From NCBI RefSeq assembly GCF_001194135.2, contig NC_068997.1, positions 38,555,634 through 38,610,711 on the forward strand: 55,078 bases of DNA. Direction: 5' to 3'. The position numbers and the translations under genes were made by a program. Below are positions 13,868-20,327 of this stretch, one piece after another; position 1 is the stretch's first letter; every line of letters begins with the position of its first letter. The notes under the pieces were generated by a model. That model searched no databases. It was given only the letters and a program-made list of their open reading frames with translations, and was not told the origin of the DNA. This stretch comes from Octopus bimaculoides (taxonomy: Eukaryota).

Positions 13868-14011
13868 TTATCTCTTAAAGGGTGATCTGGAAGAATTATC
13901 ATAAAGTTGTCTGGTGCTGAATAGTGAAACACTAAAACCAAACAGGGACAAGAAAACAGCAACTGGTAAGATGAATTGATCGATTTTACTGCTGCTGGTT
14001 GAACCCTCTGC
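13868..14011 (-). CDS. Exon 3 (terminal coding exon) of an 89-aa single-pass mitochondrial-type microprotein
   Basis: Acceptor tttttttgcag at 14012. Phase 0: AEGSTSSSKIDQFILPVAVFLSLFGFSVSLFSTRQLYDNSSRSPFKR*. Hydrophobic helix; in frame with exon 2. Confidence 0.8.
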   Translation of the reverse strand, partial: AEGSTSSSKIDQFILPVAVFLSLFGFSVSLFSTRQLYDNSSRSPFKR

Positions 14012-15030
14012 CTGCAAAAAAAGAATAACAATTTTTTTTTTAACAATATAAACTTAGTTTATTAATATTGACAATATATAAATTAGAGCAATTAAATGTT
14101 TAACAACAAATAAAATCTGCTTTCACAGATTCCCATGACTCTGTTGCCATGCAATTTCATTATTATAAATTTGAATTGGGATCTTGAGTCCAAGTGAATC
14201 TTTCATTAGTTGATTACACAACCATGGACGTTACCTCTAAGGACGCCTTGCAGTTACTCTCTTGATAGAGCTTGGTGATCCTGACCACTGATCTGATGAG
14301 ATTCTCCACTCAGCATCAATGTAAGAAGCACCATTGGTTCATCAGAGCTTTTCCACTACCTCTTCACAATCCACCAGGCTACAGTCTCATGACTTCGCTG
14401 TATCCTAACAGGGTGGCTGAACAGGATCTATCCCTTGCAAAAGGGCAGCCTGTAACTATGATTGTCACTCCATGAGGTACTTTCAAAATACCCACATACC
14501 CAAATAAATGTGACACCTAAATAAAGTTGTATAATTTAATAGTATCAGATTTTATCTGCTCTTCTAAAAATAGTAAGAACCGTATGTTTCTAGAAATTGA
14601 TGCACGTGAATTAAACAAAGAAGAGCATCTTAATACTTAGCTTTTAACACTTATGATTATCTGAACTCAGCAGACTAAGATTTAGTGGGATATANNNNNN
14701 NNNNNNNNNNNNNNNNNNNNNNNNNNNNNNNNNNNNNNNNNNNNNNNNNNNNNNNNNNNNNNNNNNNNNNNNNNNNNNNNNNNNNNNNNNNNNNNNNNNN
14801 NNTTATACTGATACTGCAGTACATACATTACAAAATATAACTTCAAGGTAAGGTAGTGAAAAGTTATTGCATATCTTTAGTGTTTAACCAAAACTGTTCA
14901 TTACACATTCTTTTATTGATTTCAGTTATTGACTGACAATGCAAGCTGTCTGAAGTTGGCTGCTTTTTGTTTTTCCGGCCTGGTAATTTTAGAATAGTCT
15001 CATAGCAAGATCTGTCTGTGTGTGTCTGTA

Positions 15031-15082
<52 letters not shown>

Positions 15083-15084
<2 letters not shown>

Positions 15085-15935
15085 AGGTCTGTCTGAAAAG
15101 TAACAGGACTGGGTGTGCTGTGTGAGCTATGGGTGAAAGAGGGACGACAAGCAGATTGTGTTATCATCTGACATGATATCTTGGGAGCATATAACTGTAA
15201 TCTTAGCTTTCTGCAACCACTGCATAGTTTTTCCCATGCTTTTGTTTGCACCACCTCTTTTTCAGGTCATTCAGCTATGAGCACTGAGGAACAAATGATG
15301 AACACTGAGCAATGAAAATTATGGTCCATGTGGAGAAAATTCCATCACAAGCACTTGAAATGCTTAAGTAAGTGTATAGAGATAACACCATGTCACACAA
15401 ACGTGTTTTTGAGTGGTAGAAGAGGTTCAAAAGGTGTGCGAGGAGGTGGAAGATGACTCCAGGAGCAGGAGGCATTCAATGAACAGGACTGAGGTCAATG
15501 TCGAGTGGTCAATCAGCAAGTCTACAAAGAGATCTTATGGCACTTGCTTTGCTCAGTGAGTAAGAAGATATGAGAGTTGTGGCAGGACAAATCGTGGCTA
15601 CTTCACCACAACAATGCAACTGCTCACAACGCCCTGAGCATCCAGCAGTTACTGGTCGAGAACACCACCATACTGGAACAACCTCCCTATTCACCTGATA
15701 TTGCTCTGTGTGACTTTTCCTTTTCCACAAGCTCAAGAGAATCATCAAGAAGTCATGAAGGCCATCAAGAGGGCCGTAATGATGGAGCTGAGGGGCATCC
15801 CAGATGAATCCTTCCAGCAGTGCTTAGAAGCATGGCAGATAAGGATGGAAAAGTGCATCAGACTCAAGGGAGATTACTTTGAAGGGGAAACCATGAAGAT
15901 TGTTGTTTGAAATTGAAATAAATTGTTTGACACCA
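15083..15935 (+). mobile_element. mariner transposon, internally deleted
   Basis: TA-tgaggtctgtctgaaaagt TIR-like start. WLLHHNNATAH...EQPPYSPDIALCDF...CIRLKGDYFEGE. Lies in intron 2 of the small gene. Confidence 0.9.
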
Positions 15936-16154
15936 GTCCTAGTATGGAAACCAGATGTTAAACAATGATGGTGATTATATACATATATATATTCATTAGA
16001 GCAAAAAGAATATCCTAAAAACCAGTATATATAAAGCTGATTTGATGAAGCAAGTGAGCTAACGTACAGTATAAACATTTGATCACTATAAACAAATCAT
16101 CTATGCAGGTTGTTCAACAAGAAAATACAAAGCTTTATCCATTGTCTATCATAC

Positions 16155-16196
<42 letters not shown>

Positions 16197-16309
16197 TCTG
16201 ACCACCTCTCATACTTACACCTTAGATCCATTATGGCTTTTTAAACCAGACAATGTATTGAAAAGACACCCACTTAGATTGCATATCTGATTTGGACCAA
16301 TAAGAGCTG

Positions 16310-16344
<35 letters not shown>

Positions 16345-17330: not shown

Positions 17331-17364
17331 ATTAGTGTAAAAGTAGTTGAGCATTCCACAGATA

Positions 17365-17545
17365 CATCATCATCATTTAACATCCATTTTCCATGTTGAC
17401 TCAAGTTGGAGATGGTTGAACAGGATCAGGTAAGGCAACATCAAATTGCAATGTCAGCTTTGGCATATTTCCAATGGCAGGATTCCCTTCCTAATGTCAA
17501 CCACTTTACAGAATGTACTGGGCCCTTTTTTGTGCACTAGCAGGC
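17365..17545 (-). mobile_element. RTE-tail repeat family C
   Basis: catcatcatttaacatccattttccatg...cccttcctaatgtcaacc. Confidence 0.7.
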
Positions 17546-17689
17546 GAAGAAAAAGTCGGGGGAAAGTAAAAGAAAGCAAAAAAAAAAACCTCGACTAAAT
17601 GGTACAGGTGGGGGGGGGGGTTAAAAGAAGAAGAGATGATGGTTCTATATCAAGTGTTGAGAAGCTGGACTGGAATGGAAGAACAAGCC

Positions 17690-17790
17690 CAAATGCCTTT
17701 GGGCAAGTGTCATTTATTACAACCCCTGGTAAATCAAAACATTGAGTGGATTTGGTAAATGGAAACTGAAAGAAGACCAGATATACAAGG
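17690..17790 (+). mobile_element. SINE family A, partial
   Basis: tttgggcaagtgtc...gagtggatttggtaaatggaaactgaaagaag. Confidence 0.7.
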
Positions 17791-20236
17791 CTATTCTGCA
17801 TTATATAAAGAAAAACAAAAGTGAAGGCAGGATGCTGGAGCATCCCAGAGAGCAGGCCTGTTGCCAGACTTTGGTGCCTGGGGGTGCTTCAGAATATTCT
17901 GGGTGGGTACTAATTTGAAATAATGGTAAAGTGTATCACTGTAAATCTGAGAGTGCACCACTGAATAGTGAGGGGGCAGTGCCGTCCAGTGCACTCCCTT
18001 AGAAACAAGGCTTTGAATCCATCTGACAGACAACCATAATTTCCACCCACTCACTTTTTCACTCACAAAGCTTGGATCAACCAGGGGCAATGTTAAAAAA
18101 TCAGTTACCAAGGATGGTATGCAGTTGGATCAAAATCAGTTATTCATGAGTGTGAAGTGAGCTTGTTAACCCTACAACCGTTCTGTGTTTATCATATATA
18201 GAGAAAAACATATTTCATCCTTCAACTATGACCAGATCACTGATAATTCCACTTATCTTTTAACACTTACAAGGAAAATATCCTTCTAATTTAAATTCAA
18301 AAATAATTTTGTAGATTAGGCATAATTGTTTCGGCAACAATTAAAGTGATAAAACCTACTTTAAGTTGTAGCAATATGAAAATATTGTTTAATTTCAATG
18401 GAATGAATTCCCCAGTAGGATAAGATCTTACTTTGATTTGTAGTTTAGATGCTAATGGGGATGGAGTTAGTGAATAAAGAAGACATAGATTGTAGGCTTA
18501 ATCCACCATCTGGGTCAAAATTCTACCTAAACCCCGGAACCGAATTCGTTTCATGATTAGGACCCAAGTTTCAACCATACTTCTTTCAATCTGTCTTGGA
18601 GCCCTAAAAAAGTTACGGGTGCTATACCCTTCCTGTAACAAAGCCATTAAAAAAAAATCTTAATTTCACTTTACTTTCGCAATTGAAGGGAGACAACAAC
18701 GTCTTCATTTATTTGCTATTTTCCAAACAACTGGCAAAGTCAGAATTGCGTTTTAAAATTATTCATATGCAAACTGAGTTGGAAAATGTTTTGTTTATTG
18801 ACTTTCTGCCTGATAAGTTTGAATTTCAATACCACAACCGAAGTTTTTCCAATATGACATGAAAGCAGACAACAAATTTAATTATATAACTTAATTTTAA
18901 TAAATCGGCCGCGCATTACAGATTGTGACCTAATATAACTTACTGAAAATAAACTAAAAACATTGGAAAACAAACACAATTTTGAAATATGCCCAACAAA
19001 TATATTTTTGTAGGATACAAAGTTCCTTTTTTTTTTAATGAAAGACAATGTTGTTGACTGAATTAACTGCTAATACATATGTACCCGGCTCTGTACGTCC
19101 CTCTAATGTCCATATCCTTAATGTCAACTTAGCTTTTCATCCAGACCAGTTCGATAGAATAAAGTGCCAGTCAAGAACCGGGATAGATGGTTTCAACAAA
19201 TCCTCTACCCTTTTATCAAAATTGGCAATAATTACCTGCAAATCCAAACAAAACGATGCGTGTGGATATATATATATATATATTTATATATATCCACATG
19301 TATATATACATAGAGACATGCATGCAAACATACAAAATCCAGAAGAACAAGCAGTTAGTAGTCAACAGGTATAAGGTTATATACCAACAAGGGAATGTTT
19401 CCTTCTTCCTCAAGACCAAAATTTTCAATTCTTCTAAATACCCATTATAGAGGTAAATAATTCAAAAAGCCTATTTCATCACGTCATAAGCGCCAATTAA
19501 AAAAAAAAAAAAAGATAATGCGATGTAAAAACGAAGAAGTGCTAAATATTCTTATTGACCCAAAAGGAATAAAATACAATATCGAAGTTTGAATTGAAAA
19601 ACATTAAAAGCATCGAACTCGACACCCGTCGACTAAGGAACCGACCGAGAGACCCTTTCTGTTAAGTTACTTGATAACAAATCTATTTCAAATTGCTTCT
19701 ACTGTCTTAAGAAAATGGAAAGAGATATAATGTGGTATTAGATACATTGTCTAAGAAGAGGAACAAAACAGTCACAGCTGAGAAACTTTTGATTAGACAT
19801 GTAGTATAAAACATGGCCTATACTTAAAACAACAACCTCAGCACCGTTTTGAATTTAATTTGAGAAAGAATATACATCATCAGAAATGATACAATACATT
19901 CAAGATAGAAAACAATCTGAAAATCGACTTACAATACAATAATGAATCGACAACAGCTTGACTAGTTATAACATGTGTCGAGTTGATTTCGGTAGAGGTG
20001 CCCGGAACGATCGGGGAAGGTGAAGGTCAGCAGAGAAAAGTGAAAACAGGCGAAAATGTGAGCAGCAGGGAAATAAAAACCGTTGACAACGATCTTCTTA
20101 AGAGACGAAATTTTAAAATAAACGATAAGCAATGAATATTTCATGCGACATACACATTCTCAATACACAATAACTGATACACGTTATAGAAAATCGCAGG
20201 TAAACAAAAGCAAAAAAAGATCAAAAACTAACTTAC

Positions 20237-20253
20237 TGAGCGACTGGAGACAT
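20237..20253 (-). CDS. Exon 1 coding part (MSPVA + 2 nt) of the microprotein gene
   Basis: gccacctATG context and donor CA|gtaagt. 17 nt + 109 nt = 42 codons, exactly in frame with the ATG in exon 2. Confidence 0.68.
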
Positions 20254-20316
20254 AGGTGGCTTCTGTTGAAAGGATTCGCTCGATCTCTCGCAAATCAAAA
20301 GACAGTCTGAATCAGA

Positions 20317-20327
20317 GCGCATGCGCA
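20317..20327. promoter_or_regulatory. NRF1/EWG-type palindrome GCGCATGCGC in the promoter
   Basis: TGCGCATGCGC on the minus strand, 64 nt upstream of the exon-1 ATG, in a locally CpG-rich patch. NRF1 sites are typical of nuclear-encoded mitochondrial gene promoters. Confidence 0.6.

What the first reader, a model, noticed from the sequence alone, without database searches (positions are those of the whole stretch)
13868..20327. Hidden three-exon gene for an ~89-aa single-pass mitochondrial-type microprotein
Seen in sequence: three minus-strand segments with consensus splice sites join in frame to give MSPVAHLSSMASVLGSTIMRKNGPIIYRSFSRTALPLLKISQAEGSTSSSKIDQFILPVAVFLSLFGFSVSLFSTRQLYDNSSRSPFKR*. 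The first 43 residues have no acidic residue and five R/K, and contain R-S-F-S-R-T, which fits the RX|(F/L/I)XX(T/S/G) MPP/MIP cleavage motif. One hydrophobic helix follows. A GCGCATGCGC (NRF1-type) palindrome lies upstream and AATAAA downstream. Inference: an inner-membrane microprotein, of the size class of OXPHOS accessory subunits or assembly factors. I cannot name a clear orthologue. The ORF track misses it because it is split.
Basis: partly seen in the sequence, partly recalled or inferred. Interest (0 to 1): 0.78.

Follow-up and report, generated by a model that had tools for sequence, protein, structure and literature searches.

The report
Annotated octopus microprotein gene, probably mitochondrial
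The three minus-strand exons form a real, conserved gene for an 89-residue single-pass membrane protein found across molluscs, but it is already annotated in Octopus bimaculoides as an uncharacterised protein and its mitochondrial role is plausible rather than shown.

Summary
Exons 20253-20237, 16870-16762 and 14011-13868 (minus strand) join at GT/AG sites to give exactly the quoted 89-aa peptide. The assembly gap (14695-14802) lies inside intron 2 and does not affect the frame.

The gene is not hidden. The window is Octopus bimaculoides chromosome CM046617.1, and the gene is RefSeq LOC106875771 (XP_014779518/9). O. vulgaris has an annotated 89-aa orthologue.

It is under strong purifying selection: dN/dS is 0.087, with 13 synonymous and 4 non-synonymous changes (P about 1e-5). 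Homologues exist in other cephalopod-like transcriptomes, a bivalve (Solemya) and a gastropod (Patella). The phase-0 intron after the conserved Q sits at the same position in all three mollusc classes.

RefSeq's extra 23 N-terminal residues begin at the ATG inside the GCGCATGCGC palindrome.

No Pfam family, solved-structure relative or COX7C similarity was detected.

All five homologues have an acid-free, basic N-terminus ending in an invariant R-x-F-S motif, then one moderately hydrophobic helix and a basic tail. This fits a cleavable mitochondrial presequence, but a tail-anchored protein is not excluded.

Verdict: a real gene of an uncharacterised mollusc family, of modest interest.

The parts
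20237..20253 (-). Coding part of exon 1 (ATG 20253-20251; M-S-P-V-A plus the first two bases of codon 6), followed by donor GTAAGT
   Evidence: The ATG and donor are conserved in O. vulgaris L001 10001-10017.
16762..16870 (-). Exon 2 (residues 6-42), holding the presequence-like region. A NAGNAG acceptor allows isoform X1 to start at 16873, which adds one Ser.
   Evidence: X1 reads MSPVAHSLSS, X2 reads MSPVAHLSS. O. vulgaris L001 15191-15299.
16789..16806 (-). Codons R28-S-F-S-R-T: the conserved R-x-F-S-(R/K)-(T/S) motif, the candidate MPP / intermediate-peptidase processing site
   Evidence: R28, F30 and S31 are invariant in all 5 homologues. The motif is found in all five.
13868..14011 (-). 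Exon 3 (residues 43-89 plus the TAA stop at 13870-13868)
   Evidence: The phase-0 intron directly before it is at the same position in Patella and Solemya.
13913..13975 (-). Codons for the transmembrane helix (about F55-T75), with a conserved small-residue face (A60, G67, S69, S71, S74)
   Evidence: Kyte-Doolittle window 55-73, mean 2.30. It is the only confident helix in the AlphaFold2 model (residues 51-82, pLDDT 72-85). Invariant columns are listed.
14012..16761 (-). Intron 2. It contains the assembly gap at 14695-14802 and a decayed mariner transposase remnant on the opposite strand (about 15300-15900).
16871..20236 (-). Intron 1, with SINE-like repeats and microsatellites
   Evidence: The stretch 16950-17330 matches many places in the O. 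vulgaris locus.
20317..20326 (.). GCGCATGCGC palindrome (NRF1-type consensus). Its internal ATG (20322-20320) is the start codon of the RefSeq models.
   Evidence: Unique in the window, 0.00 expected. Conserved in O. vulgaris. The ORF from this ATG is closed by a stop in O. vulgaris.
13692..13697 (-). First AATAAA after the stop codon, a candidate poly(A) signal
   Evidence: 170 nt after the stop, with the same hexamer and context 174 nt after the stop in O. vulgaris. This is weak evidence in an AT-rich genome.

Best explanation
This is the nuclear gene LOC106875771 of Octopus bimaculoides. It is a genuine, selectively constrained three-exon gene for an 89-aa protein (90 aa with the alternative NAGNAG acceptor). 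It belongs to an uncharacterised family present in cephalopods, gastropods and bivalves. That much is shown.

The rest is inferred. The acid-free, basic, Ser/Thr-rich N-terminus acts as a cleavable mitochondrial presequence. MPP cuts after R28-S29. The exposed Phe is then removed by an Icp55-type aminopeptidase, leaving S31. Less likely, MIP/Oct1 removes eight residues. The mature chain is then about 52-59 residues long. It sits in the inner membrane through one helix (about 55-75). The conserved small-residue face of that helix (A60, G67, S69, S71, S74) packs against the helices of a partner complex. The basic C-terminal tail lies at the membrane surface.

Which complex it joins is unknown.
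For: Real gene:
- The splice product is reproduced exactly.
- It is identical to annotated XP_014779519.1, and an 89-aa O. vulgaris orthologue, CAI9734966.1, exists.
- dN/dS is 0.087, with 13 synonymous against 4 non-synonymous changes and P = 9e-6. The other two frames look neutral and contain stops.
- Three transcript-like Logan contigs from related species carry the CDS uninterrupted across the exon 2/3 junction. They differ from each other by 1 non-synonymous and 5 synonymous changes.
- An exhaustive phmmer search finds homologues in Solemya velum and Patella caerulea.
- The phase-0 intron after the conserved Q is at the same position in Octopus, Patella and Solemya.

Start codon: the upstream ATG used by RefSeq runs into a stop in O. 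vulgaris (MRSDCACLL*).

Presequence reading:
- In all five homologues the N-region has 0 D/E, 3-5 K/R and 5-9 S/T. It ends in R-x-F-S-(R/K)-(S/T), with R, F and S invariant.
- The R-10 motif definition is in PMC7996597.
- Intermediates that start with F are the normal substrates of Oct1 and Icp55, and mature N-termini are usually stabilising (PMC3128517). S31 fits this.

Helix: the single helix 51-82 is the only confident element of the AlphaFold2 model.
Against: - No localisation data of any kind, and no dedicated targeting predictor was available.
- The motif plus acid-free N-terminus occurs in 2.8% of shuffles of the single sequence.
- The block around and after the motif (FSRTALP.L+.SQ) is the best-conserved part of the N-terminal half. 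That is unusual for a discarded targeting peptide.
- Octapeptide removal would leave L, L, L or K as the mature N-terminus. These are destabilising residues, unlike most Oct1 products.
- The charge distribution is a C-tail of +2 to +4 against a neutral or acidic N-side linker. This is the opposite of what a simple stop-transfer N-matrix/C-IMS topology would favour under the positive-inside rule. It equally fits a tail anchor.
- There is no detectable similarity to any known mitochondrial subunit.
Confidence: 0.5

Rival explanations
1. It is a tail-anchored membrane protein of the mitochondrial outer membrane or the ER. The C-terminal helix and basic tail are the targeting signal. The N-terminal 54 residues face the cytosol. 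The invariant R-x-F-S (a basophilic-kinase-type R-x-x-S site) is a regulatory or binding motif rather than a cleavage site. It would then loosely resemble small phospho-regulated membrane regulators such as phospholamban.
For: The TM helix ends 14-16 residues from the C-terminus. Its hydrophobicity is moderate (KD 1.5-2.3) and the C-tail is net +2 to +4 in all five homologues. By established knowledge of tail-anchor sorting, these are the hallmarks of outer-membrane tail anchors. The R-x-F-S...LP block is conserved more strongly than expected for a discarded presequence. There is no hydrophobic signal peptide.
Against: The complete absence of acidic residues upstream of the motif in five divergent homologues, with a first acidic residue appearing right after it, is the classic presequence pattern and is not needed for a cytosolic domain. 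The resemblance to phospholamban is one of spacing only, recalled from memory and not tested. There is no sequence similarity to any PDB chain.
Confidence: 0.25
2. The true product is the RefSeq 112/113-aa protein that starts at the ATG inside the GCGCATGCGC palindrome. Its acidic N-terminal extension (MRSDSDCLLICERSSESFQQKPP) would mask any presequence, so the protein would not be mitochondrial.
For: In O. bimaculoides the upstream ATG at 20322 is in frame with no stop. NCBI's models use it.
Against: In O. vulgaris the same ATG opens a 9-codon ORF that ends in TGA before the conserved ATG, and the interval carries a 9-nt indel. The O. vulgaris, Patella and transcript-derived proteins lack any such extension. 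The transcription start may lie downstream of the palindrome.
Confidence: 0.08
3. It is a chance spliced ORF or non-coding transcript, with exons that look joinable but are not translated.
For: The ORF is short and the splice consensus is degenerate. Nucleotide identity of the CDS to O. vulgaris (93.7%) is no higher than that of the best-conserved intron flank (93.0%).
Against: 12 of 17 substitutions are at third codon positions, dN/dS is 0.087 and P = 9e-6. Protein-level homologues exist in three mollusc classes with a shared intron position. The CDS is uninterrupted in transcript contigs.
Confidence: 0.02

Closest known systems
Small presequence-bearing single-pass subunits of the mitochondrial inner membrane, such as COX7C and COX8 of cytochrome c oxidase or NDUFC1 of complex I
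   Same: Overall build: a precursor of about 60-90 aa, a basic acid-free presequence, one TM helix and a short basic C-tail. Human COX7C also carries an R-x-F-x-x-S motif (R7-R-F-T-T-S; sequence confirmed against PDB 9i6f_L) and an R-(H)-Q-L motif after its helix, which resembles the (T/A)-(R/H)-Q-L here.
   Different: There is no detectable homology. hhalign of the family profile against COX7C gives a probability of 0.1%. The Pfam COX7C and COX8 models are not hit. No PDB chain matches at E <= 10 other than one unrelated transferase at E = 1.2. The COX7C signature NLPF and the COX8 P-x-G-W are absent by direct reading. The comparisons with COX8 and NDUFC1 rest on sequences recalled from memory only.
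RefSeq LOC106875771 (XP_014779518.1 / XP_014779519.1), UniProt A0A0L8GN32 and O. vulgaris CAI9734966.1
   Same: This is the same gene.
   Different: The RefSeq models add 23 N-terminal residues that are not conserved in O. vulgaris. All records are named only 'uncharacterized' or 'hypothetical', and no paper in the library mentions the locus.
Tail-anchored outer-membrane proteins, as a class
   Same: A single moderately hydrophobic helix close to the C-terminus, flanked by basic residues.
   Different: A presequence-like, acid-free N-terminus with a processing-type motif is not a feature of that class. No member is homologous.
EMRE (SMDT1), the single-pass regulator of the mitochondrial calcium uniporter
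   Same: An animal single-pass protein of about 100 aa with a presequence.
   Different: EMRE's defining C-terminal poly-acidic tail is absent; the tail here is basic. There is no Pfam or PDB hit. The EMRE features are recalled from memory.

Membership tests
Protein-coding gene under selection (as opposed to a chance ORF) | Excess of synonymous over non-synonymous change in the proposed frame only | tested here: met
   dN/dS 0.087, Sd = 13, Nd = 4, P = 9e-6. Frames +1 and +2 give pN/pS of 1.5 and 1.1 and contain stops.
Protein-coding gene under selection (as opposed to a chance ORF) | Orthologues with a shared exon-intron structure in distant relatives | tested here: met
   A phase-0 intron follows the conserved Q in Octopus, Patella (L006 3090|3304) and Solemya (L007..LSQ|gtaagt...cag|GCT).
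Protein-coding gene under selection (as opposed to a chance ORF) | Spliced mRNA across the proposed junctions | tested here: inconclusive
   Uninterrupted CDS in three Logan contigs of related, unidentified species. For O. bimaculoides itself there are only the RefSeq X1/X2 models, and no reads could be inspected. The exon 1-exon 2 junction is supported only by the two octopus annotations.
Mitochondrial precursors with an R-10 (MPP + MIP/Oct1) motif | R at -10, F/L/I at -8 and S/T/G at -5, as defined in PMC7996597 | tested here: met
   R-x-F-x-x-(S/T) is present in all five homologues at aligned columns.
Mitochondrial precursors with an R-10 (MPP + MIP/Oct1) motif | Stabilising residue at the mature N-terminus after octapeptide removal (PMC3128517) | tested here: not met
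   The predicted mature N-termini are L38 (octopus), L (transcript species), L (Patella) and K (Solemya) (alignment; rule). Removal of only the Phe would leave the invariant S31 instead.
Mitochondrial precursors with an R-10 (MPP + MIP/Oct1) motif | Basic, acid-free, hydroxylated N-terminal presequence | tested here: met
   0 D/E, 3-5 K/R and 5-9 S/T up to the motif in all five homologues.
Mitochondrial precursors with an R-10 (MPP + MIP/Oct1) motif | Actual import and two-step cleavage | not testable with these tools
   This needs an import assay or N-terminal proteomics.
Cytochrome c oxidase subunit 7C | Sequence or profile similarity to COX7C (Pfam model, PDB chains) | tested here: not met
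   hhalign probability 0.1%. There is no Pfam hit and no COX7C chain in the PDB searches.
Known OXPHOS, TIM/TOM or MCU small subunits with solved structures | Detectable sequence similarity to any PDB chain | tested here: not met
   The profile search gives one unrelated hit at E = 1.2 and the single-sequence search gives none. The Foldseek hit has E = 7.1 on a low-confidence model and is meaningless.
Tail-anchored membrane proteins | A single TM helix within about 30 residues of the C-terminus and no N-terminal signal peptide | tested here: met
   The TM helix spans 55-73/75 of 89, with a 14-16-residue tail, in all homologues. The N-terminus is not hydrophobic enough for a signal peptide, judged by inspection.
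Tail-anchored membrane proteins | Post-translational insertion with the N-terminus in the cytosol | not testable with these tools
   This needs topology and localisation experiments.
NRF1-regulated promoters | GCGCATGCGC palindrome close to the transcription start | tested here: met
   A unique copy at 20317-20326, conserved in O. vulgaris within an invariant 18-nt block. It was not found within 3 kb upstream in Patella or Solemya.
NRF1-regulated promoters | Binding by an NRF1/Ewg orthologue, and position relative to the real TSS | not testable with these tools
   No CAGE or ChIP data. The RefSeq CDS would place the palindrome inside the transcript.

The most novel reading that the evidence does not exclude
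The protein is a mollusc- or lophotrochozoan-specific accessory subunit or assembly factor of a mitochondrial inner-membrane complex (respiratory chain, ATP synthase or a carrier/translocase). It would have no counterpart, or no recognisable counterpart, in vertebrates, flies or yeast.
Probability: 0.25. Interest if true: 0.45.

Novelty: new member of a known kind. Interest (0 to 1): 0.3.

Why it matters
As a gene discovery it adds nothing, because the locus is already in RefSeq and UniProt. There are three modest gains:

- An annotation correction. The conserved start is the ATG at 20253, not the one inside the palindrome, so the product is 89/90 aa rather than 112/113 aa.
- A family definition. 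This 'orphan' belongs to a family spanning cephalopods, gastropods and bivalves, with a shared intron and a sharply conserved R-x-F-S...LP...Q / G-x-S-x-S-x-F-S-x-(R/H)-Q-L signature.
- A testable hypothesis: that it is a processed mitochondrial single-pass microprotein.

If confirmed as a lineage-specific subunit of a mitochondrial complex, it would interest people working on the composition of mollusc or cephalopod mitochondria. It would not change general understanding.

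Tried and rejected
- Profile search of the 5.8-billion-protein database with the five-sequence alignment failed twice by time-out, and a search with P0007 failed once. The last allowed search, with the Patella protein, found only itself. The taxonomic range beyond Mollusca therefore remains untested by profile.
- COX7C homology was suggested by a similar R-R-F-T-T-S presequence motif and an R-H-Q-L post-helix motif. 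It was rejected by hhalign (probability 0.1%).
- Pfam scans of all five members gave nothing beyond a DUF at E = 0.41. PDB searches by sequence and by profile gave nothing relevant.
- The AlphaFold2 model (mean pLDDT 59.6) and the Foldseek search of the PDB (E = 7.1) were uninformative, as expected for a single helix.
Look-up of X2 found no record.
- The species behind the Logan runs SRR30931880, ERR4030420 and SRR25158130 could not be identified from the literature.
- I asked whether the 115-aa ORF fused upstream in contig L005 has a counterpart in the window. It does not, and it has no Pfam domain.
- I considered and rejected EMRE (basic rather than acidic tail), a signal-peptide secretory protein (the N-terminus is not hydrophobic) and a second copy in the window (tblastn finds only exons 2 and 3).

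Full report
**1. The observation**

Read on the minus strand, the three segments are 20253-20237, 16870-16762 and 14011-13868.
- The junctions are CA|GTAAGT ... TTTTAGCAG|C (phase 2) and CAG|GTAATT ... TTTTTTTGCAG|G (phase 0).
- The first 43 residues contain five R/K and no D/E, and R28-S-F-S-R-T is present.
- GCGCATGCGC lies at 20317-20326. It is the only copy in 55 kb, against 0.00 expected from shuffles.
- The first AATAAA after the stop is 170 nt downstream, at 13697-13692.

**2. The assembly gap**

The gap (14695-14802) is inside intron 2, 683 nt before the exon 3 acceptor. The frame is set by the two splice junctions and does not depend on the gap.
- Both flanks align collinearly with the gap-free Octopus vulgaris assembly: window 14804 maps to L001 18466 and window 14694 maps to L001 18833.
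- The 366 nt that O. vulgaris has there are a SINE-like repeat with stops in every frame.
- Homologous mRNAs and gene models go straight from the conserved Q to the next residue. No exon is therefore hidden in the gap.

**3. Where the window comes from, and whether the gene is hidden**

The peptide is 100% identical to residues 24-112 of XP_014779519.1, 'uncharacterized protein LOC106875771 isoform X2 [Octopus bimaculoides]'.
- The window is base-for-base identical to GCA_001194135.2 chromosome CM046617.1 over 13868-20322.
- Isoform X1 (113 aa) differs by one Ser. This is explained by the tandem acceptor TAG|CAG at 16871-16876.
- O. vulgaris has an annotated 89-aa orthologue, CAI9734966.1, with four amino-acid differences.
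- The gene is missed by a simple ORF list, but it is not new. No paper in the library mentions it, and every record calls it uncharacterised or hypothetical.

**4. Is it a real coding gene?**

Yes.
- Against O. vulgaris the CDS has 17 substitutions, split 3, 2 and 12 over codon positions 1, 2 and 3. Nei-Gojobori counts are Sd = 13 and Nd = 4, dN/dS is 0.087 and the binomial P is 9e-6. The two other frames give ratios above 1 and contain stops.
- Plain nucleotide identity (93.7%) is not higher than the best intron flank (93.0%). The signal lies in the pattern of change, not its amount.
- An exhaustive phmmer search of 1.84 billion representatives found four further homologues. Two come from Logan assemblies (E = 1e-11). 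The others are Solemya velum KAL5009863.1 (E = 2e-6) and Patella caerulea KAK6180824.1 (E = 3e-4).
- The Logan contigs (1.2-1.3 kb) carry the CDS without interruption across the position of intron 2. They are therefore spliced transcripts. Two of them keep what looks like intron sequence before exon 2. The two species-level variants differ by one non-synonymous and five synonymous changes.
- In Patella and Solemya the genomic loci have an intron with GT/AG ends in phase 0 directly after the conserved Q. This is the same place as octopus intron 2.

**5. Start codon**

RefSeq starts the protein at the ATG inside the palindrome (20322-20320), which adds MRSDSDCLLICERSSESFQQKPP.
- In O. vulgaris the palindrome is conserved, but the ORF from that ATG stops after nine codons (MRSDCACLL*). 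The interval also has a 9-nt indel.
- No other homologue has such an extension.
- Met10, in exon 2, corresponds to the start used in the other cephalopod transcripts. In Patella and Solemya the start also lies in the exon equivalent to exon 2. The ancestral start is thus probably in exon 2. Either start leaves the N-terminal character unchanged.

**6. Anatomy of the family (alignment A2)**

Invariant residues are R28, F30, S31, L35, P36, L38, Q42, I56, A60, G67, S69, S71, F73, S74, Q77 and L78.
- The signature is R-x-F-S-(R/K)-(T/S)-(A/G)-L-P-x-L-(K/R)-x-(S/A)-Q-x-(E/D). A variable Ser-rich linker of about 10 residues follows. Then comes a helix ending G-x-S-x-S-x-F-S-x-(R/H)-Q-L, and a 10-12-residue basic tail.
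- In all five homologues the N-region up to the motif has no acidic residue, 3-5 K/R and 5-9 S/T.
- The helix has Kyte-Doolittle means of 1.5-2.3.
- The C-tail is net +2 to +4, and the linker is net 0 to -2.
- AlphaFold2 is confident only for the helix at 51-82.

**7. Most likely mechanism**

The N-terminus has the composition of a mitochondrial presequence. The R-x-F-x-x-(S/T) motif meets the published R-10 definition (PMC7996597).

Two things fit the octapeptide (MIP/Oct1) version poorly:
- It would leave L, L, L or K as the mature N-terminus, whereas Oct1 products normally start with stabilising residues (PMC3128517).
- It would discard the best-conserved block of the N-terminal half.

The three invariant residues R28, F30 and S31 fit better with MPP cleavage two residues after the Arg, followed by removal of the single destabilising Phe by an Icp55-type aminopeptidase. 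That leaves S31 and keeps the conserved block in the mature protein. The R-3 form of this motif is established knowledge that I did not verify in the library.

The conserved Ala, Gly and Ser residues on one side of the helix suggest packing against another transmembrane helix, that is, membership of a complex. All of this is inference.

**8. Rivals**

- The helix is near the C-terminus, is only moderately hydrophobic and is followed by a basic tail. That is also the signature of tail anchors of the mitochondrial outer membrane. The charge distribution does not favour a simple stop-transfer topology. I give this rival 0.25.
- The RefSeq long form is unlikely (0.08), for the reasons in part 5.
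- A chance ORF is effectively excluded.

**9. Comparison with known families**

- There is no Pfam family.
- No PDB chain matches by sequence or profile, apart from an unrelated transferase at E = 1.2.
- The one specific lead was COX7C. It has an R-R-F-T-T-S presequence motif and an R-H-Q-L motif after its helix, and I confirmed its sequence against PDB 9i6f_L. It fails profile comparison with a probability of 0.1%.
- The family therefore works like the small presequence-bearing single-pass subunits, but is not a demonstrable member of any of them.

**10. Promoter elements**

- The palindrome sits in an 18-nt block that is invariant between the two octopuses. It was not found within 3 kb upstream in Patella or Solemya.
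- It is compatible with an NRF1/Ewg-type site, but such sites are not specific to mitochondrial genes.
- The AATAAA is conserved between the octopuses, but it is unremarkable in AT-rich sequence.

**11. Verdict**

It is already annotated, though with a probably wrong N-terminus. The mitochondrial inner-membrane reading is the best available hypothesis (about 0.5) but is untested, and no orthology to a known OXPHOS component could be shown. The interest is modest.

Noticed in passing
window 20320-20322 and 20254-20322 (minus strand): The RefSeq models XP_014779518/9 start at the ATG inside the GCGCATGCGC palindrome and add 23 residues. In O. vulgaris the same ATG opens only a 9-codon ORF ending in TGA. 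The extension is therefore probably an annotation artefact, or at most a uORF-like feature.
   Followed up: yes
window 16871-16876 (minus strand): A NAGNAG tandem acceptor (TAG|CAG) explains isoforms X1 and X2, which differ by one Ser. The same TTTTAGCAG is conserved in O. vulgaris.
   Followed up: partly
window 20379-20427: A block of about 49 nt some 125-175 nt upstream of the ATG (TACATTAGATTTAAAAATTAATTTTCTTACTAAATTGTTTAAG...) is almost perfectly conserved with O. vulgaris. It is better conserved than the surrounding 5' flank (70% overall) and than the CDS. It could be a core promoter or another regulatory element. An assembly gap (20470-20802) begins just upstream.
   Followed up: no
window 15300-15900, plus strand (inside intron 2): A decayed mariner-type transposase remnant lies antisense to the gene (…WLLHHNNATAHNALSIQQLLVENTTILEQPPYSPDIALCDF…), broken by stops and frameshifts. 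It gave no Pfam hit at E <= 0.001.
   Followed up: partly
L001 18467-18832 (the O. vulgaris counterpart of window gap 14695-14802): The sequence missing from the window is, in O. vulgaris, a SINE-like repeat (GGGGGCGGCGAGCTGGCAGAAACGTTAGCACGCCGGGCGAAATGC…). Repeat content is the likely reason for the assembly gap.
   Followed up: partly
window 16950-17330 (intron 1) and 16350-16530 (intron 2): These are interspersed repeats with many diverged copies (65-80% identity) on both strands elsewhere in the 30-kb O. vulgaris locus. There are also long (TA)n and (CA)n microsatellites at 16160-16200, 16310-16350 and 15030-15090.
   Followed up: no
window 44974-48456 (+), 39067-41692 (-), 35581-35860 (-): There are non-LTR retrotransposon fragments: an Exo_endo_phos endonuclease (E = 1e-9) followed by RVT_1 on the plus strand, and RVT_1 (E = 6e-13) on the minus strand. 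There is also a Mos1-type HTH_48 transposase N-terminus. Several are interrupted by assembly gaps. The window holds 17 gaps in all.
   Followed up: partly
L005 91-435 (Logan SRR25158130 contig): In one related species the transcript has a different 5' part. It gives a 115-aa open frame fused in frame to exon 2, with no Pfam domain and no counterpart in the octopus window. It may be an alternative 5' exon, a read-through or a chimeric assembly. L003 and L004 instead retain intron-like sequence with a transposon remnant before exon 2.
   Followed up: partly
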